From: Lepidodermella squamata
Taxonomy: Eukaryota > Animalia > Gastrotricha
Assembly (NCBI GenBank): GCA_047495785.1
Contig: JBLDXI010000017.1
Span: 2,418,001 to 2,482,000, forward strand
DNA: 64,000 bases
Direction: 5' to 3'
Shown here: piece after piece, positions 3,130 through 58,144 of the stretch
Numbering within the stretch: the first letter of the stretch is position 1
Layout of the letters: each line of letters starts with the position of its first letter
The notes under the pieces: model-generated
What the model was told of the DNA's origin: nothing
The model's input: only the letters and a program-made list of their open reading frames with translations
The model's database searches: none
Made by a program: the position numbers and the translations under genes

Positions 3130-4129
3130 ATGGATGACGACCTTGGTCTCATGCCAGAAACGGACCGGAAGGTATGCTCTTGTGAAATATCTAATATGTG
3201 ACTTGTAGCAATGCTATCAAGTAGGTATTGTTATTTTTGATTTACCATTCGTCATAATTTTACAGGCTGCGAAACAAGGACGCCGAGCTCAACCCGCATC
3301 GCAGAAAGCAGCAACTTCCAGGCAAAGTGAATACGATGGGTCAATTCTTGAGAAAAGCCAAGAAAGGCGGGCAAAGAAGCCAGACGAACAGCGAAAAACT
3401 ATGACTACTTCTCTGCTTGATGACAGTGATGAAGCAGCAGACGAAAAGCCTAAAAGAAGTTCGTTTATCTCTATGATTTTTATATTTCTATGCAACAAGT
3501 TTTAGGCGGCAAGCCGAAGTCCACTTGGGATGTGGATCCGAACGGCGAAAGAGGTGACGACGCTTACGATGATGAACGGCTAATGGCAAAAGGAAGAACT
3601 AAAGGAGGATCGGATGCGGATTCAGATGCTGATATCATGATCCCGGAGCTTGAGGATACCAAGGATGGAGGTGGCGGTGACAACGAAGGAGGCGTGATTT
3701 CGATGTCCCCTGGGTTTGCACTCATTGGCCCTTTTAAATTGATCGAAATATCGGTGTTTACTTACAGCGTTGTCACTAAGGTTGCAACATATCGTGAACT
3801 AGAGGATGACTTGATGAAACATCTCCCGTTCTTAACTTTGGTTTGATACGCTGCTTACCTCTTATTGGAATGCTAATATTTCGTTTTGCACAGGATCAAG
3901 AAGTTGACCTCAAGCCATTGACCAAATTTCTTATCCCCGAAGCTTTGACGGTCGAGGTGAGATTATGCGTAGGATTTTTTCATTTCATCAAGTTGTTGTC
4001 GTTTAGGCTGACGGTTCATGGGAATGGGATGCTCTTTATGCAGAAGTAGCTTCTGAGCTAATGAAGGAAATAGAAACCCTCCATTCACTGAACTTGGAAA
4101 CTGAGCTTCAAACTAACTCTGCTTTATAG
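3130..4129 (+). CDS. IFT43: Intraflagellar transport protein 43 (6 exons)
   Basis: Spliced product MDDDLGL...IMIPELED...[37 protein letters not shown]...WEWDALYAEVASEL matches the IFT43 C-terminal signature. GT-AG introns of about 50-95 nt. Confidence 0.9.
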
Positions 4130-36354: not shown

Positions 36355-39300
36355 TCAGCTAGTAAGTGGCATATGTACTCCGGCCTTCGCGAACGAACGG
36401 CGCAGTGAGCTTACCGACTCGTTCGCAGATTGTTTGTTTTTCTCCACTAAAATCCGGTTACCGCTAATAATAAAATTCGATATAATTCAAAATTGGATAT
36501 TAAATGAAAAAACAATACCTATCCAACACGAATTTGTTCTCGCTGAAGGTAGGCAGCAATAGGTGAAGGCGATGAGTTCGAACGAGTCGCTGACTAGCGA
36601 TTTCAGATGACTCAGCCAATTCTCCCAGCAGCTTCAGAATTTGCAAGTACTAAAAATAATCGTTATAATTTTTTTTCCAAAAAAATCGAAGGTATCAGAC
36701 CTCGGCTGGTGAGCTGCATAGAGGTGAATTCAACAGAGAAGTCAGCATCGGTATGATGCTGAAGCCATCGCGAGTCGTATTGACAGCGTCCAAATCTTTC
36801 ACTCCGGTCGCGGCGATATCCAAAAGCAGCGATCTTTGATACCGTGCGTTCTAAAATGACCGAAAATCGATGAAATATTGCAAGCTTTTTCAATTGTGGA
36901 ACATACATCCAATGTTGATGGGTAGTAGAAAGCAGTTGACAAGCTAGTCGGAACAGTCGGCTTCAAACTCGCGGCCAATTGCAGAGCAGTATTATCACGA
37001 ATATACGAATTTATCGGCTTCGCAAGTGAAGAAGCAGTTTCTGAAAAAAATCAGAAATTATTCCAAAAATCCGCCTTAAATTTCGTGAAAACCTACTATG
37101 GCCGAAGAGAATTCCAGGCAGCCGGGCTATTAAAGTTGCCATAGCTGGGGCAACTCTAGCATTTTGTTCAGGGATCGATTGACGGATCAAATCGAAAAAT
37201 TGAATCAGAGGTAGCGAAGGTTTAATTTGATGCCGAGCGTAGGCCTCAAAGCCAAACAAAGCAGCGTAGGCCAATGCGCGAAGGCGGTCATCTTTCAGTG
37301 ATAAAGCGGCCAGTAAAAACGCCAACACGTGAGATGAAACGAATTTCTGAACCGTAATTGGCCAATTGTGGAACGCAAAGGTTCGCACGAAAACTGGCAG
37401 TAAGAACGCGGGGTCGTAAATCGACGACCCTTGACTGGTTTTAACAGTAACCCCGCGTTCTATTTCGTACAAGCTACGATCGGTCGGCATGGACAACGCC
37501 GTTTGAAGCAGAATATTCGGTGACAAGCTTTCCAAGGTTGTGTCTGCGGTTAGCCGCATAGCTCCAGGCGAGAAGGCGGGCACAAATTGCTTCTTCGCGT
37601 TCTTTTTACCCCAGATACAAGGCTGGTAGGGTGGCCACAGAGCGCGATCCGGGTCTTGATTATCAAAGCAATTGTCAAAAGATGCCAAACAACTGAGAAT
37701 TAGCTGGTCGCGTTCTGATAAAGTGGCTGTGTAATTTGAGAGTAAAATCGGCACAACACCGCGCCATAGCGACGCGTAAGAACGCCATGATGGCCCGCGG
37801 AACCACAGAAGCGCATGAAGACACCTTAAAATCATGTTGCTGCGCTCGAGATTTTGCGGGTCGCTCAAATCTTCGACGTCAATCATTTTCAACAAGAAGT
37901 CGTGTGGATTTCCACCTTGAAACAAAAAATTTAGATCAAAGCAATTTACGAATTTCTAAGTTTACTTTCGTCGAAAATCAGTGATTCGGTAGTATCGATA
38001 ATTTGGCGAATGTCGTCATTCAAAATTTCTTCGGGGGCTGAAAACGCGCATTGAATGATTGCAGGCATGACATAGGCGTGAACCATCCATTTTTCAGAAC
38101 CTTCGAAGTTCGCGCATGATTCGACGAGCCAAGCAACAAATTTGACTTTGTGGCGCGTTTTCATTTGGGAGACATCAACGTTAGCACAAGCGTTGCTGAC
38201 ACATGCCATAGTTTGACTATTCACCCCGCTCCAGCTTAAAACTGATGATAGTATTGAGGTGAAGGAGTTGTGATAATCGGCGATCGGCAGTTTGATCGAT
38301 TTGAGGCAAGCAGTTACCGCCTTAACAGTAACAGCGCTTTCGACCTGTTCAGCTGAAGAAGCTGAAGCGATTAGGTTCAAAATTGCTAGAATTTCGCTCT
38401 CGCGGCACAGAGCCACATCCCCGTGATTGATAAAACTCAACAACTGACCGAGATTTGTCGTTTCACTAATTTGAACCCCCTCACCAACAGCCAAGCAGCG
38501 AACTCCGCTCAGAAACAGAGCATTGGCAACATTGGAACCCTGAGGTAAAACGGGCAACAAGGTCGCGACCAAATCAAACAAACGCTGTCGAGTTTTAGGC
38601 GTATTTTTGTCACCAAGTCGAGCCGACGTAGCAACGCATTCAGCGACGAATTTACAAACCCGAGTATAACTCGTTTTTCCATCATTTTTATCGTGCCAGT
38701 ATAGCACTAGTTTCTTCATAGATTTTAAGCAGGCCGACGTAAGTTGACTGCGAAGCGAGCTCAAATTCGATCGAGGTTGGGCAGCAATCAATTCATACAG
38801 CAAATCAGCGCCTTCCTCGAAGTATTGACTCGAAGCTTCTTCATCAAAAGCCAAATTGCCGGAGAACTCGACAAAAACCTTGTCGATTTCCTCGTCGCGT
38901 TGATTCAGTTCGTTGACGAAAATGCGCAATACTGCCGATTTTTTCGATAAATCACCACCGCGCTTGTCACGCTTCACGACCATTCGAGCCAAATCGGTGA
39001 TTTCGTCCGATTTGTGGCACAGTGACACGACAAGACTGATTGCAGTTAGAAAATCGTCAGTTTCGGGCAGGGTGTTCTTTTTAAGGAGGGTTTTAACAAA
39101 ACTCAGCGCAGTCTCGCCGTTGAATTTGCACAAACTGTCGTCAATTTTGACCGATAATTGCCGGCCTAGGCTGACGAAAGGGCTGTCCGGATGAAGACGA
39201 ATGTATCTACAGAGGGATTGGATAGCTGGGCCAAGAAGATGGCGAGATTCCGAGTGGCAAATGTTGGAAACTGAAATGAGCTCGCCGTTTTGTGGGCCTG

Positions 39301-41771
39301 CCAAAATTCTCAGAAAATGGCCGATATTTCTTTGGCGCTTCATCATCACACTCAAACAAGGTCCAATCGCCTGCGTTTTCGGCTTCTTTAGGCCAATATC
39401 TACCAGCCATTTCACGATTAGATAAGCCATGGTGTCATTTAGCGTAACGCTTCCACCAGCGAAAATCGAATCAACGAGTCTTTGCAGGTCGCCGATATCA
39501 CAACTACCGCCATTAACTTTGACCATAAACTCGGCTAAACCACCAAGATCTTCGGCTTCATTGTACTGTTCAGTCCATTCACTGCTTTTCGAAGAAATCA
39601 AATCTTTTAGAGCATGGATGGAAGCCGCAAAACTATTGCCGAAATTCAGCTTGTCATTTTGCAGATGTTTCAGAGCAGTTAACACCGGGTTTTGTTTACC
39701 AGATTTCGCCGAAGAGTTAAGGCCTTCGAACAGAGCGATCACAGCCTTGCAATAATCGGATTCAGTCAGCTGACTTCCGATCGTTGAAATACAAGCCGCA
39801 ACCTCGCCTTGAGCAGCTTTAACGCCAGACAAGCATATGAAAACCTGTAATTTTTATAAATTAATTGAAAAATCAGATTTAGAAAAGTCCTCCTTAAAAA
39901 AATACCTCGGCTAATGTCATAGCGTGTTGACCTGGCGCAGTAGCGCTTTCTTCTATAATCCATCTTAACAGTGAATCCTCGCTGGTAGACGCAGTTTTTG
40001 TCCAGTTTTTCGATAGCCCAATCGCCAGACAAAGCCTGGCAAGCGGCTTTCGGATTTTCCGAAACTCCTTTGACTTGGCAACAATTTGCAAATCATCAAT
40101 CAATTTTTCCAGGGCGAAAGACAGAACCAAGAGACCAGAAAATCTGCAGAAAGTAGTCAAGTACAGCAAACAGCTGTTAACTGCCGCGACGATTTGACGA
40201 CGCTCGGTGTCATTTGCAGAACTTCCTGGTTTTCTCAGCAAATCCGCCGCGGCGACAACGACATTGAAAACTTTATCCGGGTCGATGAAACTGCGCTTAA
40301 CGCGCCAGAAAAACAGGCGCATGACGTTGTCGTGGCTCAGCGAGGATTTCGCCGTGAAAACACTGACGCAGCGTTGAAGAAGCGCGGCTTGGAATGAAAT
40401 GGGAGCGGCAATCATTTCCCAGTGCTGCTTCGGGCCAATTTTGCACGCCATTCTCGCTTGATCGAGAAAATTTGGGGCTTGGGGTAGACTCAAAGATGTC
40501 AAAAGCGACAGCATAACCGCATTTGTTGACGGCGTGACCCTCGTCGGCAAATTTGCGATAACAGGAGGAAGTTGCGAGACAACAGCCGCATTCGCTAGCA
40601 TAATATCAGGCTGCTTTGCGTGATTTTTCAATTGATCGAAATATTGAGGAATCTGATCCGGTAAAGCCGATAAAATATCGACAAGAATCGACAGCATTCC
40701 ACCATTTTGTTGCGTTATTAGGAAGCTGATGATTTTAGTCGCGAGGATATTCGCATTTCCAGCCGACCCGGAGCCTTCCTTTAAAACAGTGGTGCCGAAT
40801 TTCGCATCGTAGAAAACAACTCCGAGCTTCGAATCGGTGAAAAGTCGTCGAATCAAAACTTGGAGAGTATCGGCCATTTCAGCTGCAGCCGGTAGAGTGA
40901 GTAATCGCAACAATTTTTCCACGTTGTCCTCATTGAACAGCTTCATTTTCGTGGTTTTGTTGATGCGAGGATTCTCAACCACCTTTTTCAACATGGTATC
41001 GACTAGCAGACTAGCAAGTCCGAAATCCTCCTCAACAATGGTTGAAATTTGCGCGAATAAAATGTCGAATAAATATCGACATTTTCCTGTTAAGGCGGAT
41101 GTGATAACTGAATCATTTTGCTCGTCGGCATGAAGCAGAATCGATAGAGCCAAATAGCCCATACAACTTCTAGCCATAGCGTATGTCGAAGCAACATGGT
41201 CAATGTTTTTCTTGAATAAATCCCAATTGAAGTTTGAGATTACGAGCGAGGCGGTTTGAGCACTTGACACCACAAGGGCAGTGAGCAATTTCAAGACAGC
41301 GTTGTAACCATTGGTCACATTGAGCAGGGCGCAGATCGATCTCATGTTGTCATGTGAGCAAATCGCCTGAGTGAATTTCGTCGCGGTTTCTTTATCCTCT
41401 TCACCGGCCAGGACGAGTAAAATCGCCTCAATTGCCTGGCAGGCAAGCATTTTCCGTTTCGGCGATTCAGAGACGGCAAGGAACCGTAGAATTCCGGAAA
41501 AGTCACTCGATTGCTGGCAATATTGTTGAACGACCAGCTTAGCAACCGGTGATTCCTGCAAGTGGGCCAGCCACTTCATTGCCGCAGCTGATGTATCGCG
41601 ATCAGACAGCATTTGCTTGAGCGCATCGCCGCAATCTGGCTCTTCGAAGATAGCTTTGGTCTTCTTTTTCGCAACTGCCTCATTCTCCTGCGGTTGATTA
41701 CTTTCTTCGTCGTAGTCTTCTGGAACGTTACTGGTATGTTCTCTCTTCCCGGGTTTTTTATCTGTTTCCAT
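36355..41771 (-). CDS. URB1: Nucleolar pre-ribosomal-associated protein 1 (URB1/Npa1), multi-exon
   Basis: N-terminal VVENPRINKTTKMKLFN (Npa1 domain), YTATLSERDQLIL, YDPAFLLP, LAALSLKDDRLRALAYAAL (NopRA1 region). Confidence 0.85.
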
Positions 41772-41883
41772 CTCAAAATAAATTCTACACACAAAAATCA
41801 CAAATTCTTCGAAGTTTTGGAAAGACAAAATTCTATTTATTACAATTCCACGAGTTTGAAAGAAGTTTCACAGGATTTTCGCT

Positions 41884-43238
41884 TTAATCATAGAGATCAC
41901 TATAAAGTTCAGACCCGATCCGAATGTATTCCTGCCGTTCGGATTCCGTCATTTTTCGAACCATCTCATCAGTCACGTCAGCGTACTGCATCAAAACGCC
42001 CTGAACGCTCACCATCGCCGAGTCGGCGGTAACAGCGGGCTGTTCCATCGGCTCAGCTTTTTCCTCCTTAACATCGACAAAATCGTCCGAGGCGTTCGAT
42101 TCAGTTTCTAGTTTTTCGTGTGATAGCAAGGTTCGAAGAACGTCAGCATTGTCTTCGTTCGAAGATTGTTTCGAGGTGGGAGATGGCTCGGAAAGCCATG
42201 GTTCGGGTTTCACGCCGAACAAATCTTCCTCCATCGCATTCGACCGGGCCCCACCGTACTCGGTGACTGGGTCCAGCTTAACACCAAACAAGGCCTCTAC
42301 ATCGTCCTGGGTAGGACTTTTAGGAGCCTGGTTCTGCTCAGCAACACTCTGCGTCATCCAAATCGGCTGTTCTCGCTTCGGTTTCACCGGCGCTGTGTCA
42401 GGTTTATGACCCGCCGGCAACACAGATACTCGAACTTCGTTGGTAATAGGAGCCTGGTTCGGCATTTTAACGACAATACTGTTATTTTTGAGATAAGCCT
42501 CCCTGGCCAGGGCAGACTGGTCGCGTTGTATAGGCGCATCAAGCATGTCCTGCCTCGCCTGTTCGCACTCTCGAAGTAGCTCGAACAACGGAGCTAGTTG
42601 CGTGTTGAACATTGTCATTAACTGACGCGCGTCGGGTTTGTTGTCGTCACCGGTCGTAACTTCGGTGACCTCAGATTTGCAAAATGTGCACAACAGCTTA
42701 CCAGTTGCCATGTCGAGTAAATGGCCGATTTCTAGGTCGGAATATAATTTTGTGCAGGTCGGACACTGGAAATTTGTTCTCCGGATAGAAGCGCGCTCCT
42801 CCTTATCTATTCGAACACGCATCTCGTCCAGCTTATATTTTACCACCGATAAAAAATTCGTGTAAGCGATTGAATAGTAATTTTGTCTCGTCTGTTTTCC
42901 TTCGTTATCAGTTTCGACTTTTAACCGCACTCGAATTAGAGATTCCTTTCGCAGATCGTTGAGTGCAGCTCTCAAAATTTTGCGATCAAAATGAAGCAGC
43001 TCGATCAGTTTATCTTCCTAAAAAAACCAGAAATTTTACAGTAAAAATCAAAATTTTCAAAACTAACTTTTATCAAAGGTCTATGGATGATCAAATCAAC
43101 AACTAAGTACGCTTCTTTGGAGTAAAATGTTTTCACGACGTGCCGAACTAAGAGCTTAAACACATCCGGAACAGCGATTTCAACGTCCCCATCGTCGGCT
43201 GATATCAAAGGGTCGTTAATGTCACCGTTTTTCGCCAT
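41884..43238 (-). CDS. GTF2E1: General transcription factor IIE alpha (2 exons)
   Basis: LVRHVVKTFY, NYYSIAYTNFLSVVKYKLDEMR, zinc ribbon CPTC...CTFC, C-terminal VSVQG...VRKMTESERQEY. Confidence 0.95.
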
Positions 43239-43441
43239 TGTTCAACAATTAAAAGTAATAACTAGAAAAATGAAAATTAATCAATCAGATGATTCATTCA
43301 GATTTAAAAGAAAAAGCAACGCGTATCATGCCGATAAAAACCAAAGTAACAAAATCGAGTTTTTCCCGTCGGTCCACAAGACTTGAACAACATGGCTTTG
43401 TCATATAAACAAACGAAAGCAGAAATAAGGTGTTTAAAATA

Positions 43442-46179
43442 TCAACGGCGCTTATTGTTGCTTTTTACAGCAGGTTTCGAAGCGGAACTTGTGGTCTCTT
43501 TCGAGGGGCCAGCTTGATCCCGATTCGCGGTGCTTCGAGTTCGGCGCATCGCTGTAGAGACAGGCTGAGCAGCCGGTGTGGCGAAAGCGGGCGAGTGGGC
43601 CGGGCTGGACGTTTCTGAAACCGGAATTAGAGGAACTCGACGGACAGTTCTGCCGCCGACATGTTGCTGCGAGGTCGCAGTTGACGTGGTTGTCGTGAAA
43701 GACTGCACCGAGGGAGTCGAAGCTAGTTGACTAGTTGTCGGCTCGTTATTTATCATAGATGAATCCGTCAGATTATTAACAGCAGCATCATCGAAATCCA
43801 GACGCTGTCGGATGGTCGAAGAATTCGCGCCAGGCAATGCAGAAGTATCCGGGAAGCTATTGAAAATCGACGCTTGCGACTCGCCAGGGGGCGTGCGAAG
43901 CTCTGGGAGAAAATCAAGAAAATTAAGGAGGATTTTTCATTTCAAATTAAATTTACTGCTAGCTGATCTGAGATCAAACGGGATCATCTGCTGTCGATTC
44001 GGGCTTTTATTGAAGAATACATCGTCAAAAGTGAACCCGTCCAGAGTTCCGACTTGATTATTCAGCTGTAAATTAGCCGCTGATGTACCTTGCTGCTGTT
44101 GCAAGTCATTGTGCTTATCCGGGCTTGAGTTGGTCGATGTTAACATAATCGGTTCAGAAGTTCCACCTGCCACCTGTTGTTGATTCGAATTTTCCTCATC
44201 AGCTGGTTGAATAATTAACCGGGTAGGGAAATTAGCAGTCAACTCTAGAGGCTGCTGGTCCATAATTTGATTTTTCTCAGGAGAGATTGTTTGCTGCTGC
44301 TGCTGCTGAATGAAACCTGGGACTTGGACCATGACAAAATTACCGTTGCCGGTGTCAACCAGGTAGTAAGACCCTGGCGCCGTGACATTGTTGTTGCCAA
44401 AAAGGACAGACAACGGAGCAGTTATGGGCGCTATAGGTATACTCGTCGCAGCGGTGGCACGAGGGGTCGGTCTATTACTACCGGTAAAACCCGGCATCTT
44501 TGGCACTAAAGGTGTCATCGAACGGAGCTTCTCCTCTACTAAAGGATCAAGCGGCTTGTTCGGGATGAAAGGTGGAGGCGATTCATAGTCTGGATCTTTG
44601 AATCTGTATTTTCGCACTCTTTGTACCCCATCCTTCGAGCCATGAGGTCGGCCTGGTCTCTTTTTTGGCTCCGGGTTCTCTCCTGGTAAAGAATTCCGAT
44701 TGCGAGACCTTTTCCGCGTCGGTTTTTTGTTGGAATCCTGAATCGTTTCAGGCTGTTTCTCCGGCTCAGAGCCCTCTACCTGCTGTGAGCTCTGAGGGTC
44801 TTGACGGGGAAGTGGAATAATCTCAAATGATGGAATTTCAGTGGGAACTTCTTCCCTTGCAGCAGAAAGGGTACGATCTAGATCAACGCATTCATCCCTC
44901 GGGAGTGGCGGTGGGGTGCTTGGCTCGGGCATTGGTGCCTCGGTAGCAGTCTCCATTAGATTTCCGATCTCATTCGCAATAGGAGCTTCTTGCTCACTCG
45001 AGGTACCTGCCACCTGGTTGTTTTCCACGAGACCTAGATTTTCAGACTGACAGTTCTCAGTCGGCAAGCCAAATGACGTCTGATCAGTAGGCATAACCGG
45101 GGCGTCATTGGAATTTGAGTCAAACGGAAGGCTGTTGTCATTTTGAAACAACGAACGAACGAATCGGTCGAAATTCGGGTCATGTTGGGTTTTCTGGATA
45201 ATCTGGCCAGCTTTCTCAGGCGATAAAATTGAATGCTAAAAACGAAGCAAATGAGTTCTATTTTCTTAATTATAAACAGCACTTACGTCTACTGGAACGT
45301 CATCTTTAGCAATAACTGAATTGATGTTATCCGCAAGAGCTCGTGCGAAATCGAAAATACTAGCGTCAAAATCGCCAATTTCGCCCAATAGATCGTTGTT
45401 ACTGACTGGAGCGACGTTCGGCTCTTCGACGTCAATCACAGGATTTTGAGCCACTGAGGCTACCGGAGTTCGCAGCGTAGGAGATTCAGGCTTCGATATC
45501 AGCTGGTTATCAGGTTTCGAGCCAAGCGATTGAGACGGACCCGGGTTATTACCGCCATACCGAAGTCTCGCTTGTACGGTTTTTCGAGAATTTGAGCTGC
45601 CAAACTTTTGCTCTGAAGCAGTTGGAGCCGGTAGAGAACCATGATCCGGGCTCTTCAGAACCTGCTGAGCTGCCACAGATGGCGGGCAGGATTGAGATGG
45701 ATCAGAAAATACTTGATTAGGTTGTTGCTGCTTAGGTAACTGGACCGCCGGAATAGGAGTTGTGCTCGTTGATGATAAAACCTGCCGAGCAACGCGGTAA
45801 ACTAAAAGAAATATTAATGCGTTTCTGGATAAGAGTTAGAACAACTAACCAGAACTTGCACTTTCAACTTGAGTCGCTGAGTTGGAGAAGGCCGGAGTTG
45901 AAGCCAGCCGAGATAGCAGGCAGTATTCCGCCAAAATATCAAGCAGACTCTTCCCGCCAATGTTCGTCGTGAATTTCAAGCCCCCGGCAAGAAGCGAAGC
46001 ATACTCCCTCAGATCATTACACTCGGATAGAAAGGAGTCATGAGACTTTTGACAACCAACTTCCGCCAAAAATCCTGTAAAATTGAATGTTATTCAATCC
46101 GCCGATTAGTGCGAGTACCCTATGACCTACCAAGGACTAGCCGCGCGACTTCCGACGGCAGGAAGGTTTCAATGGTCAT
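43442..46179 (-). CDS. NPAT: NPAT/Mxc-like histone locus body scaffold (LisH N-terminus, AT-hook, long low-complexity region), multi-exon
   Basis: Spliced N-terminus MTIETFLPSEVARLVLGFLAEVGCQKSHDSFLSECNDLREY...GKSLLDILAEY matches the NPAT LisH. AT-hook KKRPGRPHGSK. Confidence 0.8.
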
Positions 46180-46404
46180 TAGATTGCAGGGTCAGTGCAC
46201 CATATTTACAAAAAATAGCATCTCTAGGTGGTCGAAACGGCAAAAGATGATCAGGTTGAAACATGCTAGGCTAGTTTATTTTATCATTACTCCAATAAGC
46301 GAATAAAATATCATGCGAATGAGTATCACAGATGAAGCAATAAATAATAAAATTTGGCATTATTGATGTGGGGAATTATTATCACAGAGTGAGCAGTCGA
46401 TCGT

Positions 46405-48021
46405 TCACCAAAAACTAAGAACAACAGCAGCGCCTGGCTTCTCAGGCGATGCGACAACAAGTCGAACGAGTGAGCTCCAAACATGACTAATGAGTATAGG
46501 CTGGCGATGCAGGACATTCAGTTGTTTCCCGTCGCCACTTGAGTAGTCCCAGACAACGATTCGTTTTCGGTCGCTGGCGGATATCAGTTTTTGCGCGTCC
46601 ATCAAAATGCACCGGACGATGCCAACGTGATCGCCCACCATTCGACGCAGCAAGGCACATTTATCCAACGACCAAATACACACAGCTGAGTCGGATGCCC
46701 CAGATGCTGCGACATTCGTGGCAATGCAGCACGCGACACAATACTGAAACAGAGAACAAAGAAATAAATTCGAGATTCGAATTCAGGTGGCTTAAAAGTG
46801 AGATAATTCAAAATCAGACTGGGGCGGTATGGTAAAATCATACTTTTCATACTAAAAAGACCATTCATCAGGAAAATAAAGAATCCGCCTTAATATTATT
46901 CGTATACGTACCACTTCACTCGAACGCAAGTGACCGCGACCAGTAGCAGTGCACCTGGCCGTGTTGATATCCCAAAATCGAACCGAGCCATCAGCTGAAC
47001 CCGAAATCAGCCGCTTATCACTCGCGAAGCAACAGCAAGTTACAGCTTCATCGTGAAGTTGATTCGAGAACAAAACTTTGGTCACTTGATGATTTTGAGG
47101 TCGAGCACTCAGTCGCAGATTTGAAGTCGTAGTTTGACCAACGGCAATGTTACGCTGCGAGAACCGAATGACAGCCAATTTGCGATCCCACCCGCCAGAA
47201 GCGACAAGGTCGTTACCATATCCCACGAGACATTCAACTTCGTCTTCATGGACGTTGAGCCGTTCTATCAAAGCTTGTGATGTCAGACTCCAGAATTCAA
47301 TGGTACCAGATGCGGTTGCGATGACAATAACGTTGTTGAACAAAATCATCTTCGTTACTGGTTTCCCGACTTGCATCGCAGCTTGAAGCATGCCGAAGGT
47401 GGCGTCGAACGTTCGAATATGACCGTCAAGACTTGATGTGATGATAATCGGGTCAGCATCTGGGTCTTCATTCGGGTTGCCACTTGAGTGCATCAAAATG
47501 ACATGGCTAACTTGACCAGATTGGTTCGACAGCGTGTAAAGGAGTTGGGCTGAAACCAGGTCGTAAACATTCAGGGAACCATCTTCAGACCCGGTAACGA
47601 CCAATCGGTTGGAACAGCCAAGAGCCGTCACTTGCTGAGAATGACCTTTAAGTAGAGGACCGACAGCATATCGACCGGTCTGCCAGTTTCGATTGCAATG
47701 ATAGGCAAGGGCGAAAATCTTCTTGAATTTCGGGATATCACCTCGCTGAAAACAGGTTGGACTGAAGAATGGACTCAGGTGCGACGGAGTTGTTCCCAGC
47801 TCGAGCGGTGGTTCAGACTCCAGATAGCCGTATTTCTCACTGAAATCGTATCGCTTACATAGCAGCTTCCAAAACAAGTCATTATCGGTGAGGTTAAACC
47901 AGCTCTTGCAACACAAAGTCGAGCAGCAGAGAGTAGGAACGTCAATGTAGGCGGTCAGCACGCGAAAGCTCAGATCAGAAGGTAATGCAGACAGTAAATC
48001 AAATGAGGCTGCTTGTGGCAT
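46405..48021 (-). CDS. F-box/WD40 protein (intron 46744-46911)
   Basis: F-box LSALPSDLSFRVL...VPTLC...CKSW...LFWK. WD repeats GHSQQVTAL...VVTGSEDGSLNVYD and LISGSADGSVRFWD. Confidence 0.9.
46810..46876 (-). ncRNA. Box C/D snoRNA, SNORD31/snR67-like (F-box coding intron)
   Basis: CTGATGA...ATGA..ATGATTT-TACCATACCGCCCCAGT-CTGA. Guide complementary to 28S ACTGGGGCGGTA. D box 70 nt from 3' splice site. Confidence 0.85.
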
Positions 48022-48095
48022 TCCAGCTATCTGCAAGTAAAAACGCTCATTAATCAACTGTAAAAAAAATTGTCAAATTCCGCGAAAATTGAATG

Positions 48096-48159
48096 AATTT
48101 CAGTAGCAGAACTGGGAGTAGAATCATAGTTTTCATTAGCTGAATTTTCATCCTTTAGA
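48096..48159 (-). ncRNA. Box C/D snoRNA, SNORD38/snR61-like (degenerate C box)
   Basis: AGGATGA...ATGA..ATGATTC-TACTCCCAGTTCTGCTA-CTGA. Guide complementary to 28S AGCAGAACTGG. Confidence 0.75.
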
Positions 48160-48302
48160 CAAAGCACGAACTGGTTGTTAAAGCCAAATATACACACCTG
48201 TTATGGACACAGCATAATTCCAACACACCGATTGACCTGCAAGGCAGAATAAATTCAATTAGTTATTGATACTAATGGTTCGAATTTTGATAGAAAAGTA
48301 TT

Positions 48303-48368
48303 ATTTTCAGTAGCAGAACTGGGAGTATAATCAATGAAATCATGATTTGTTAAATGTCATCACGGATT
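48303..48368 (-). ncRNA. Box C/D snoRNA, SNORD38/snR61-like
   Basis: GTGATGA...ATGA..TTGATTA-TACTCCCAGTTCTGCTA-CTGA. Confidence 0.88.
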
Positions 48369-48539
48369 AAACCCATGAAGGATGTGAAATTCAGCTCACC
48401 TCAAGCACGAATGATAAGTAGCATCGCAGATTGCAGATCGCAGCGTCAATGATGACCTCGACTCGATCTGCAAAATAAATGAAGTCTTTGAATATTGAAT
48501 ACCATGAAACTGAATCAGAATACTGTCTCATTAATAATA

Positions 48540-48607
48540 AAAATCAGAGGCCTTTTTGTCAATCAAGAATTTTCTGAGAGAAGGGTTTGAAAGTATCATC
48601 ATCTAGA
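48540..48607 (-). ncRNA. Box C/D snoRNA, target not recognised
   Basis: ATGATGA-TACTTTCAAACCCTTCTCT-CAGA...TTGATTG-ACAAAAAGGCCT-CTGA. D box 76 nt from 3' splice site. Confidence 0.75.
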
Positions 48608-48758
48608 AGTTTAAATTTCTTAAAAAAAAGATGCCGTCATTTACCTTTCAAAAATGCTGTCGACGTTTTCAGTTACAGCTCGTTCAATAGCCTGCGCAAA
48701 AATAAGAGAAATTTAATGGTAGGATAAATTAAAAAAGATTTTAGGGAAAAAATTTCAA

Positions 48759-48840
48759 CATATCAGAGTTCAAATTGCCTCATGTATTTCAACTAGCTTA
48801 TCGAAATATAGGACTAACAGGAAACTTAACATCATATTAA
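48759..48840 (-). ncRNA. Box C/D snoRNA, target not recognised
   Basis: ATGATGT...TTCGATAAGCTAG-TTGA..ATGAGGC-AATTTGAACT-CTGA. D box 71 nt from 3' splice site. Confidence 0.65.
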
Positions 48841-48996
48841 GCCGAATCTCTATAATCATTTAAAAAACCAACCGTTCAAAAGCTGATGGCCCAAGTTGAC
48901 TCGCAACGCGCGGTATAGATAGCGTTGAAGCCTGCAATACAAAATAATACTTTGAAATTATGGGCGAAAATTGGGAAAATTATCATGCGATCGATA

Positions 48997-49062
48997 GGTT
49001 TCAGACTGGGGCGATATATTATAATCAATTTTATCATTTGGGGACATCAATCATCACTAGAA
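48997..49062 (-). ncRNA. Box C/D snoRNA, SNORD31-like D guide plus second D' guide; identical core to 50118-50183
   Basis: GTGATGA-TTGATGTCCCCAA-ATGA..TTGATTA-TAATATATCGCCCCAGT-CTGA. Confidence 0.85.
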
Positions 49063-49411
49063 TTTCGAATACTGAGAAGTAAAAAAAAATATTTCTCACC
49101 TCTTATGGAACCAAACTTGCTTGCTGGGTGATTCGTGTCTGCTTTAAATTAATTAAAATCTAAAAATTAGAAAGTAAAATGATTATAATGTTTTAAGACT
49201 TTATTGTCTGCTCAGTAAGACAAGATACACAAATAAGAACAAAACCGGACGCTATATTGTCACAAACATCGCAGTTGGTAACCGCAAGAAATTTTTAGAA
49301 CATTATTTACAAGTGCTCGAACTAACAGAAAAGGCCATGCGTGGTTTTGTTCCAAGTTTTTTTTTCGTTCAGTAGTAAAATCAAACCAGCGATGCCTAAT
49401 AGGCTTAATAA

Positions 49412-58144
<8,733 letters not shown>

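What the first reader, a model, noticed from the sequence alone, without database searches (positions are those of the whole stretch)
48031..49160. GAS5/UHG-like non-coding snoRNA cassette fused as the 5' leader of an F-box/WD40 mRNA
Seen: between the PRP8 3' end and the F-box ATG are five tiny exons (39-68 nt) separated by five snoRNA introns. The joined exons hold only micro-uORFs (MLLIIRA*, MLCP*). The first exon is preceded by an acceptor-like AT-rich AG (about 49139-49158) with no obvious partner donor. Inference: a dedicated snoRNA-host module is spliced onto a protein-coding SCF adaptor mRNA, or released from a polycistronic PRP8 transcript. The uORFs could decouple F-box protein output from snoRNA output.
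Basis: partly seen in the sequence, partly recalled or inferred. Interest (0 to 1): 0.78.

Follow-up and report, generated by a model that had tools for sequence, protein, structure and literature searches.

The report
snoRNA-hosting leader of F-box gene
Five tiny non-coding exons, each followed by an intron that carries one guide RNA for ribosomal RNA methylation, lie in front of an F-box/WD40 gene and are probably spliced onto its message; the layout is real and conserved, but it is a known kind (like human RCC1/SNHG3).

Summary
On the minus strand there are five GT-AG micro-exons (42, 59, 47, 68 and 39 nt) and five introns of 163-181 nt between the PRP8 stop codon and the F-box ATG. Each intron carries one box C/D snoRNA.

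At least four of the five snoRNAs have box-adjacent guides complementary to this genome's own 28S rRNA. Two of these guides match those of SNORD31 and snR61/SNORD38.

A related species (F-box 60-62% identical) has the same layout: PRP8 stop, about 240 nt, then at least 8-10 snoRNA introns, then an acceptor 2 nt before the F-box ATG.

Splicing of the leader onto the F-box exon is inferred, not shown:
- Every micro-exon has a donor.
- The last snoRNA sits 69 nt before the F-box acceptor, as in every other intron here.
- No AATAAA lies between exon 1 and the ATG.
- ATG is depleted in the leader exons (3 observed, 11 expected) but not in a stand-alone host gene of the same genome.

No RNA reads could be obtained. 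The uORF "decoupling" idea is not supported. How exon 1 begins remains open: a spliced-leader acceptor, its own start site, or a donor in the PRP8 3'UTR. The scan has noted similar host genes elsewhere in this genome. This is a new member of a known kind, of modest interest.

The parts
49412..49414 (-). Stop codon of PRP8 (last coding exon; PROCT and JAB/MPN domains)
   Evidence: ORF 49412-50059; Pfam PROCT 1.1e-50
49305..49310 (-). Donor-like GTAAAT in the PRP8 3'UTR, 169 nt before the E1 acceptor. Candidate partner donor, unproven.
   Evidence: The relative has GTTACA at L007:6698, 166 nt before its acceptor-like site.
49200..49205 (-). AATAAA, probable PRP8 poly(A) signal. It is the only AATAAA between the PRP8 stop and the F-box ATG.
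49142..49143 (-). AG of the acceptor-like site before E1, 57 nt after the AATAAA
49100..49141 (-). Leader exon E1 (42 nt if it starts at the AG; the true 5' end is unknown)
49001..49057 (-). Box C/D snoRNA in intron 1 (intron 48932-49099). The D guide is SNORD31-type and predicts 28S G2945. The D' guide has 10 nt of complementarity to 28S 1248-1257.
   Evidence: An identical C-to-D copy lies in the last PRP8 intron, 50122-50177.
48873..48931 (-). Leader exon E2 (59 nt)
48763..48835 (-). Box C/D snoRNA in intron 2 (intron 48692-48872). A 16-nt element after the C box is conserved in the relative. The best pairing is 12 bp to 28S about 3256-3268. The target is uncertain.
48645..48691 (-). Leader exon E3 (47 nt)
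48544..48602 (-). Box C/D snoRNA in intron 3 (intron 48468-48644). The D' guide is conserved in the relative and predicts 28S A1741.
48400..48467 (-). Leader exon E4 (68 nt). Holds uORF1, 48424-48401 (MLLIIRA*).
48307..48363 (-). Box C/D snoRNA in intron 4 (intron 48237-48399). The D guide is snR61/SNORD38-type and predicts 28S A1369.
   Evidence: An 85% identical copy lies inside PRP8 at 51878-51939.
48198..48236 (-). Leader exon E5 (39 nt). Holds uORF2, 48215-48201 (MLCP*). It is in frame with the main ATG, and its stop codon ends 12 nt before that ATG in the spliced leader.
48100..48153 (-). Box C/D snoRNA in intron 5 (intron 48031-48197). A paralogue of the intron 4 snoRNA with the same D guide and a degenerate C box (GGATGAA). 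It ends 69 nt before the acceptor of the F-box coding exon.
46912..48030 (-). First coding exon of the F-box/WD40 gene (ATG at 48021)
   Evidence: F-box-like PF12937 27.5 bits against cut-off 24.3; WD40; FBXW7 1e-30; orthologue P0001
46814..46871 (-). Box C/D snoRNA in the coding intron (46744-46911). A second SNORD31-type D guide with 13 nt of complementarity to 28S 2940-2952.
   Evidence: Also present in the relative's coding intron.
46405..46743 (-). Second coding exon of the F-box/WD40 gene, including the stop codon. AATAAA follows at 46280-46275.

Best explanation
The stretch 48031-49141 (minus strand) is a conserved, non-coding, snoRNA-hosting 5' leader of the F-box/WD40 gene.

How it probably works:
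- RNA polymerase II transcribes the whole unit.
- Removal of each 163-181 nt intron releases one box C/D snoRNA. Each snoRNA sits 69-76 nt upstream of its 3' splice site.
- The snoRNAs guide 2'-O-methylation of 28S rRNA. Predicted sites in this genome's own numbering are G2945, A1369, A1741 and G1252.
- The five micro-exons are joined to the coding exon. The result is an mRNA with a 264-nt leader that is poor in ATG, from which the F-box/WD40 protein is translated by scanning.

The cassette grows and changes by local duplication of units made of an intron, its snoRNA and a micro-exon. It shares snoRNA paralogues with the introns of the neighbouring PRP8 gene and with the F-box coding intron.

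Shown: the exon-intron anatomy, the snoRNA features and rRNA complementarity, the conservation of the layout, the absence of a poly(A) signal, and the ATG depletion.

Inferred: that the junctions are used, and that the leader-bearing RNA is the translated F-box mRNA.

The start of E1 is unresolved. My rough odds are 50% a spliced-leader acceptor (with or without co-transcription with PRP8), 30% an own start site in the pyrimidine-rich stretch, and 15% cis-splicing from the 3'UTR donor at 49310.
For: 1. Anatomy. There are five GT-AG micro-exons. The only AATAAA between the PRP8 stop and the F-box ATG is PRP8's own, at 49205-49200. The one ATTAAA lies inside intron 2.

2. Spacing. The distance from D box to 3' splice site is 69, 71, 76, 70 and 69 nt in the leader introns and 70 nt in the coding intron. 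In the relative it is 69-83 nt. The last leader snoRNA keeps this spacing relative to the acceptor of the F-box coding exon in both species, 69 and 76 nt.

3. Conservation of layout. In the relative, L007 carries the PRP8 stop, a 236-nt gap, an acceptor-like site and six snoRNA introns. L002 carries four more snoRNA introns and an acceptor 2 nt before the F-box ATG. Its coding intron also holds a SNORD31-type snoRNA. No AATAAA occurs anywhere between the PRP8 stop and the F-box ATG there.

4. ATG depletion in leader exons, against dinucleotide-preserving shuffles:
- Window: 2 observed, 6.6 expected (P=0.007).
- Relative: 1 observed, 4.5 expected (P=0.027).
- Both together: 3 observed, 11.2 expected (P=0.001).
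- A stand-alone non-coding host gene 0.53 Mb away has 12 observed against 9.2 expected. Fisher P=0.017.

5. The snoRNAs are real.
- Guides next to the D or D' box match the genome's own 28S rRNA.
- The guide stretches align to the SNORD31 and snR61 consensus.
- The intron 1 snoRNA is 100% identical from C box to D box to a copy in the last PRP8 intron, while the flanks have diverged.
- No copies of these two snoRNA types were found elsewhere in the 121-Mb assembly.

6. The downstream ORF is a bona fide F-box-like plus WD40 protein that begins in this exon in both species.
Against: - There is no RNA evidence.
- The protein database holds no transcript-derived copy of this protein.
- The ATG statistic rests on 684 nt and a single control gene.
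- Earlier unchecked notes say this genome trans-splices a leader. If so, the acceptor at 48031 could also take a spliced leader, giving F-box mRNAs without the cassette.
- The relative's two contigs (L007, L002) are joined only by a repeated unit that is 87-90% identical. The exact number of introns there is therefore uncertain.
Confidence: 0.7

Rival explanations
1. E1-E5 form a stand-alone non-coding host gene (Uhg/GAS5 type). The F-box mRNA starts independently at the acceptor 48031, for example by receiving a spliced leader, so the two are neighbours in a gene cluster and not one mRNA. Both forms could also coexist, with cis- and trans-splicing competing at 48031.
For: - Stand-alone multi-intron non-coding host genes exist in this genome.
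- Earlier unchecked notes report leader trans-splicing at acceptors just upstream of start codons.
- The ATG lies only 9 nt after the acceptor here and 2 nt after it in the relative, as is typical of trans-spliced genes.
Against: - E5 ends in a good donor (CAG|GTGTGT), as does the last leader exon of the relative. No poly(A) signal follows either of them.
- The intron 5 snoRNA keeps the 69-nt spacing to acceptor 48031, which implies that this intron is spliced in cis.
- ATG is depleted in the leader exons but not in the stand-alone host gene.
Confidence: 0.15
2. The micro-exons are a 3' extension of PRP8. A donor in the PRP8 3'UTR (49310) is spliced to E1, so the cassette is a set of 3'UTR introns of PRP8 transcripts that skip the poly(A) site at about 49185. 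This would resemble the 3'UTR snoRNA introns of Drosophila mfl/Nop60B.
For: - The donor-like GTAAAT at 49310 is 169 nt before the E1 acceptor, the same length class as the snoRNA introns.
- The relative has GTTACA 166 nt before its acceptor-like site, inside the only similar-looking block of the two 3'UTRs.
- The relative has no AATAAA after the PRP8 stop.
- PRP8 introns carry paralogues of the leader snoRNAs.
- Precedent: mfl/dUhg6 (PMC1821038).
Against: - The 169-nt stretch has no credible snoRNA. It has a degenerate C box, and the 15 nt before its CTGA find no rRNA match.
- It contains PRP8's AATAAA.
- The chain still ends in the F-box coding exon, so this reading concerns only the 5' end of the unit.
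- The similarity of the 3'UTR block is weak.
Confidence: 0.1
3. Chance arrangement of GT/AG dinucleotides and C/D-like motifs in AT-rich intergenic DNA, with no function.
For: Rfam gathering thresholds are not reached by any unit.
Against: - The layout and the guides are conserved in a second species.
- rRNA complementarity sits exactly next to the D or D' boxes.
- A paralogue has an identical snoRNA core with diverged flanks.
- The spacing to the 3' splice site is fixed.
Confidence: 0.01

Closest known systems
Human RCC1/SNHG3 complex (SNORA73A/B, also called U17a/b)
   Same: A non-coding snoRNA host module shares its first exons with a protein-coding mRNA. The snoRNAs lie in introns between non-coding 5' exons, and the long RCC1 mRNAs carry those exons as a leader (PMC4647676; PMC10538263, citing Kiss and Filipowicz 1993).
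   Different: - There: two H/ACA snoRNAs, an annotated SNHG3 poly(A) site that gives a separate non-coding isoform, and a second downstream RCC1 promoter.
- Here: five box C/D snoRNAs (at least 8-10 in the relative) and no poly(A) signal inside the cassette.
- Here the cassette sits 57 nt behind the poly(A) signal of another snoRNA-hosting gene, PRP8.
Drosophila mfl/Nop60B with the former 'dUhg6'
   Same: A chain of non-coding exons with one snoRNA per intron was first taken for a separate non-coding host gene and then shown to belong to a protein-coding gene. The copies arose by duplication, and the position rule relative to the 3' splice site holds (PMC1821038).
   Different: There the cassette is in the 3'UTR and is reached through alternative poly(A) sites. 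Here it lies upstream of the coding sequence.
Non-coding snoRNA host genes (UHG/SNHG1, GAS5, Drosophila Uhg genes)
   Same: Tiny, poorly conserved exons. One snoRNA per intron. Conserved snoRNAs. Only micro-ORFs.
   Different: Those end in their own poly(A) site and encode no protein. Many are 5'TOP genes and targets of nonsense-mediated decay (PMC5238794; the 5'TOP point is from my own knowledge). Here the chain runs into a conserved protein-coding exon, and ATG is depleted.
Spliced-leader operons (nematodes, tunicates, flatworms and others)
   Same: Same-strand genes with a very short gap, and an acceptor-like site shortly after the upstream gene's poly(A) signal.
   Different: No leader-bearing read was seen here. 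The downstream unit would begin with non-coding snoRNA-host exons instead of a coding exon.

Membership tests
Box C/D snoRNA | C box (RUGAUGA) near the 5' end and D box (CUGA) near the 3' end, 50-90 nt apart | tested here: met
   All five leader units and the coding-intron unit span 54-73 nt from C box to D box. Intron 2 (ATGATGT) and intron 5 (GGATGAA) have variant C boxes.
Box C/D snoRNA | At least 10 nt of guide complementarity to rRNA directly upstream of the D or D' box, with the fifth-nucleotide rule | tested here: met
   Against this genome's own 28S:
- Intron 1 and coding-intron units: G2945.
- Introns 4 and 5: A1369.
- Intron 3: A1741.
- Intron 1 D' guide: G1252.
- Intron 2: only a 12-bp pairing next to no clear D' box, so inconclusive.

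Box C/D snoRNA | Reaches the Rfam gathering score of a named family | tested here: not met
   No hits at gathering score. Below threshold: SNORD31 20.2 bits against 40, snR61 20.6 against 45. The guide stretches align well. I therefore call them SNORD31-type and snR61/SNORD38-type by guide, not family members by score.
Box C/D snoRNA | Conserved across species, or across paralogues, more than the flanks | tested here: met
   Guides and boxes are shared with the relative. The intron 1 unit is identical to the copy in the last PRP8 intron while the flanks have diverged.
Box C/D snoRNA | A stable small RNA is expressed, and the target is methylated | not testable with these tools
No small-RNA or RiboMeth data were available.
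Non-coding snoRNA host gene (UHG/GAS5 type) | One snoRNA per intron, with short exons that are poorly conserved and lack an ORF | tested here: met
   Best exon-to-exon identities with the relative are 0.62-0.71, which is background level, against 0.79-0.82 for orthologous snoRNAs.
Non-coding snoRNA host gene (UHG/GAS5 type) | The spliced RNA ends in its own poly(A) site and carries no protein-coding exon | tested here: not met
   There is no AATAAA between E1 and the F-box ATG in either species. The last donor faces the acceptor of the coding exon. This is sequence evidence only.
Protein-coding host with snoRNAs in 5'UTR introns (RCC1/SNHG3 type) | Non-coding 5' exons are spliced to the coding exons in mature mRNA | not testable with these tools
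   Inferred from donor-acceptor continuity, spacing, conservation and ATG depletion. No reads were available.
Spliced-leader-resolved operon (PRP8 followed by the host/F-box unit) | Same strand, with a gap of tens of nt between the upstream poly(A) signal and a downstream acceptor | tested here: met
   The AATAAA ends at 49200 and the AG is at 49143-49142. The same-strand run PRP8, F-box, unknown gene, TFIIE-alpha, Npa1 is partly kept in the relative.
Spliced-leader-resolved operon (PRP8 followed by the host/F-box unit) | A non-genomic common leader is found on the downstream RNA at that acceptor | not testable with these tools
   Only earlier unchecked notes for other loci of this genome exist.
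F-box/WD40 substrate adaptor | N-terminal F-box followed by a WD40 propeller | tested here: met
   PF12937 at residues 11-56, 27.5 bits against cut-off 24.3. WD40 69.9 bits. Best solved natural relatives are FBXW7 (1e-30) and beta-TrCP (1e-22).

The most novel reading that the evidence does not exclude
PRP8, the micro-exon cassette and the F-box gene are made as one polycistronic primary transcript. It yields about 14 snoRNAs and two mRNAs, and it is resolved by pasting a spliced leader onto a non-coding snoRNA-host exon (E1). This would be a snoRNA-bearing operon unit in a phylum (probably Gastrotricha) for which I found no published record of trans-splicing. Cis- and trans-splicing could then compete at 48031 and set how much F-box mRNA is made per round of snoRNA production.
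Probability: 0.3. Interest if true: 0.55.

Novelty: new member of a known kind. Interest (0 to 1): 0.35.

Why it matters
- It shows how a compact animal genome packs its rRNA-modification guides. Within this assembly, SNORD31-type and snR61/SNORD38-type guides were detected only in this PRP8 / leader / F-box stretch.
- An F-box substrate adaptor would then be transcriptionally tied to snoRNA supply.
- The ATG-poor leader gives a simple sequence test for telling a "host leader of an mRNA" from a "stand-alone non-coding host gene".
- The mechanism itself (intronic snoRNAs, non-coding host exons shared with a coding mRNA) has been known since RCC1/U17 and mfl/dUhg6. The value is mainly for annotation and comparison.

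Tried and rejected
- Rfam at gathering score found nothing.
- The metagenome scan with the F-box alignment gave only a 22%-identical WD40 protein, which was useless.
- A sixth snoRNA in the PRP8 3'UTR (a CTGA at about 49216-49213, about 70 nt before the E1 acceptor, with a 4-bp stem) was considered and rejected. Its C box is degenerate and the stretch before its CTGA has no rRNA complementarity.
- Alignment of the PRP8-stop-to-E1 stretch between the two species is at background level.
- The uORFs as a regulatory device were rejected as unsupported. They are not conserved, and ATG is depleted.
- Kiss and Filipowicz 1993 is not held in the library. It is cited only through PMC10538263.
Exons were searched and analysed one by one by reference, and junctions were checked only as dinucleotide pairs.
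- No place was named as human-like by any tool.
Full report
**What is there.** All coordinates are on the minus strand.
- The PRP8 gene ends at 49412-49414. Its last ORF carries JAB/MPN and PROCT domains.
- Its only AATAAA lies at 49205-49200.
- An AT-rich acceptor-like site follows, with its AG at 49143-49142.
- Then come five micro-exons: E1 49141-49100 (42 nt), E2 48931-48873 (59), E3 48691-48645 (47), E4 48467-48400 (68) and E5 48236-48198 (39).
- They are separated by GT-AG introns of 168, 181, 177, 163 and 167 nt.
- The last acceptor, at 48032-48031, opens the first coding exon of a two-exon gene. The ATG is at 48021, exon A ends at 46912, the coding intron is 46911-46744, and exon B is 46743-46405.
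- The protein has an F-box-like domain above Pfam's cut-off and a WD40 propeller. FBXW7 and beta-TrCP are its best solved natural relatives.
MLLIIRA* starts at 48424 and MLCP* at 48215. Each lies inside one exon, there are no other ATGs, and none forms across a junction.

**The intronic RNAs are box C/D snoRNAs.**
- Rfam gives nothing at gathering score.
- A permissive scan of 47900-49300 returns almost only minus-strand C/D families on exactly these units. The guide stretches align to the SNORD31 consensus (intron 1) and the snR61/Z1/Z11 consensus (introns 4 and 5).
- I took 18S and 28S rRNA from this same assembly and looked for complementarity directly upstream of the D or D' boxes.
  - The intron 1 unit and the coding-intron unit pair with 28S around 2940-2952, predicting G2945.
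  - The intron 4 and intron 5 units pair with 1366-1376, predicting A1369.
  - The intron 3 unit pairs through its D' guide with 1737-1747, predicting A1741.
  - The intron 1 unit's D' guide pairs with 1248-1257.
  - Intron 2 has a 16-nt element conserved in the relative, but only a 12-bp pairing with 28S at about 3256-3268, so its target is uncertain.
- From my own knowledge, SNORD31 and snR61/SNORD38 guide conserved Gm and Am sites of the large-subunit rRNA. I did not map these positions to human or yeast numbering.
- The intron 1 unit is 100% identical from C box to D box to a copy in the last PRP8 intron (50122-50177), while the intron flanks have diverged. The intron 4 type has an 85% identical copy inside PRP8 at 51878-51939.
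- Neither type was found elsewhere in the 121-Mb assembly.
- PRP8 introns carry further C/D units that obey the same position rule.

**A related species has the same layout.**
- The only close relative of the F-box protein in the large protein collection is P0001 (60-62% identical), from ENA metagenome contigs.
- The closest PRP8 C-terminal fragment, P0005 (89% identical), comes from the same sample.
- L007 shows the PRP8 stop, a 236-nt gap, an acceptor-like site, then seven micro-exons (46-90 nt) with six introns of 175-204 nt. Each intron holds one C/D snoRNA.
- L002 shows four more such introns, and an acceptor 2 nt before the F-box ATG. Its coding intron also holds a SNORD31-type snoRNA.
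- The two contigs meet in a repeated two-intron unit that is 87-90% identical. The relative therefore has at least three copies of that unit, and its intron total (at least 8-10) is uncertain.
- snoRNA types are partly shared with the window (the intron 2 type, the intron 3 type, the snR61 type and the SNORD31 type) and partly different. Exon sequences are not alignable above background.

**Is the cassette joined to the F-box mRNA?** I could not see RNA. Four sequence arguments point to joining.
1. Every micro-exon in both species ends in a donor, including the last one. No AATAAA lies between E1 and the ATG in either species, while both have AATAAA 105-125 nt after the F-box stop.
2. The D box ends 69-76 nt before the 3' splice site in every leader intron of the window, and 69-83 nt in the relative. 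The last snoRNA keeps that distance to the acceptor of the coding exon (69 and 76 nt). This acceptor is therefore the one to which the snoRNA is positioned. The paper on Drosophila mfl discusses the same position rule, citing Hirose and co-workers (PMC1821038).
3. The acceptor-then-ATG arrangement and the start of the protein are conserved.
4. ATG is depleted in the leader exons. Against dinucleotide-preserving shuffles the counts are:

| Exons | ATG observed | ATG expected | P |
|---|---|---|---|
| Window leader | 2 | 6.6 | 0.007 |
| Relative leader | 1 | 4.5 | 0.027 |
| Both leaders | 3 | 11.2 | 0.001 |

The reverse-complement triplet CAT occurs 18 times in the two leaders counted with L002's duplicated exons, where ATG is also 3. 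As a control I re-annotated a stand-alone nine-intron non-coding host gene 0.53 Mb away. It has 12 ATG against 9.2 expected, and Fisher's test of leader against control gives P=0.017. TAG is depleted in both the leader exons and the control. That looks like avoidance of cryptic acceptors and is not specific to the leader. ATG depletion is what a scanned 5'UTR should show and what a pure non-coding host RNA need not show.

I put the fused reading at about 0.7.

**The uORF idea.** The two uORFs have no counterpart in the relative. Its single uATG lies at L007:7199, at the end of exon 2. The overall signal is avoidance of ATG. The literature does say that snoRNA host transcripts are often targets of nonsense-mediated decay, which uncouples host and snoRNA levels (PMC5238794). 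Nothing here shows that these uORFs do this.

**How the unit starts.** Three options remain open.
- The acceptor-like AG lies 57 nt after PRP8's AATAAA. Earlier notes of this scan, which are unchecked leads, report spliced-leader trans-splicing and operon-like clusters in this genome, probably that of the gastrotrich Lepidodermella squamata. I found no paper on trans-splicing in gastrotrichs. The same-strand run PRP8, F-box, unknown gene, TFIIE-alpha, Npa1 is kept in the relative as far as its contigs reach.
- The pyrimidine-rich stretch before E1 in both species could be a TOP-like start site.
- A donor-like GTAAAT at 49310 in the PRP8 3'UTR lies 169 nt before the acceptor. The relative has GTTACA 166 nt before its own. 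This length class equals that of the snoRNA introns, but the stretch holds no credible snoRNA. The relative also lacks any AATAAA after PRP8.

**Comparison with what is known.**
- The closest described case is human RCC1/SNHG3. The non-coding host gene and the long RCC1 mRNAs share a start site and first exons, and SNORA73A/B come from the introns between them (PMC4647676; PMC10538263, citing Kiss and Filipowicz 1993).
- Drosophila mfl/Nop60B is the mirror image. There a chain first annotated as the non-coding gene dUhg6 turned out to be 3'UTR exons of a coding gene (PMC1821038).
- The present locus differs in several ways. It carries more snoRNAs, of the C/D class. It has no internal poly(A) signal. 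It abuts another snoRNA-hosting gene, and it belongs to a different phylum.
- Earlier notes of this scan list several host genes in this genome, including leader-type ones. The arrangement therefore seems recurrent here.

**Verdict.** The feature is real and conserved. It is a new member of a known kind, of modest interest. The fused reading is probable but needs junction reads.

Noticed in passing
window 50122-50177 and 51878-51939 (minus strand), inside PRP8: PRP8 introns carry paralogues of the leader snoRNAs. One is an exact C-to-D copy of the intron 1 snoRNA. The other is an 85% identical copy of the intron 4 type. Neither type was found elsewhere in the assembly.
   Followed up: partly
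window 55664-55725, 54122-54177, 53225-53287, 50980-51034 (minus strand): Further box C/D units lie in PRP8 introns, with the D box 69-79 nt before the 3' splice site. This agrees with the other first-stage note that reports an array of 14 snoRNAs.
   Followed up: partly
L007:8098-8382 and L002:1-920: The relative's cassette contains at least three tandem copies, 87-90% identical, of a two-intron unit. The unit is micro-exon, A1741-type snoRNA intron, micro-exon, snR61-type snoRNA intron. The cassette therefore grows by local duplication.
   Followed up: partly
window 49295-49330 (minus strand) and L007:6685-6715: This is the only similar-looking block in the two PRP8 3'UTRs (AGCAC, then GT, then AAATAA). 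It could be a donor or a variant poly(A) signal. The relative has no AATAAA between the PRP8 stop and the F-box ATG.
   Followed up: partly
Leader exons of the window, L007 and L002, and control exons in L008: TAG, AGG and GTA are strongly under-represented in the leader micro-exons (TAG 2 observed against 12.7 expected). TAG is also rare in the control host gene (2). This is probably avoidance of cryptic splice sites in very short exons.
   Followed up: no
window 37946-57400 (minus strand); L001: A same-strand run PRP8, F-box/WD40, unknown protein, TFIIE-alpha, Npa1 has short gaps. From the F-box gene onward, the order is kept in the relative's contig L001. The arrangement looks like an operon.
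   Followed up: no
L008 (G000:C17:3015200-3018700), minus strand: The stand-alone nine-intron host gene uses a TTTAAAG acceptor at one internal intron. The unusual AAAG acceptor-like site before E1 is therefore within the range of cis acceptors in this genome.
   Followed up: no
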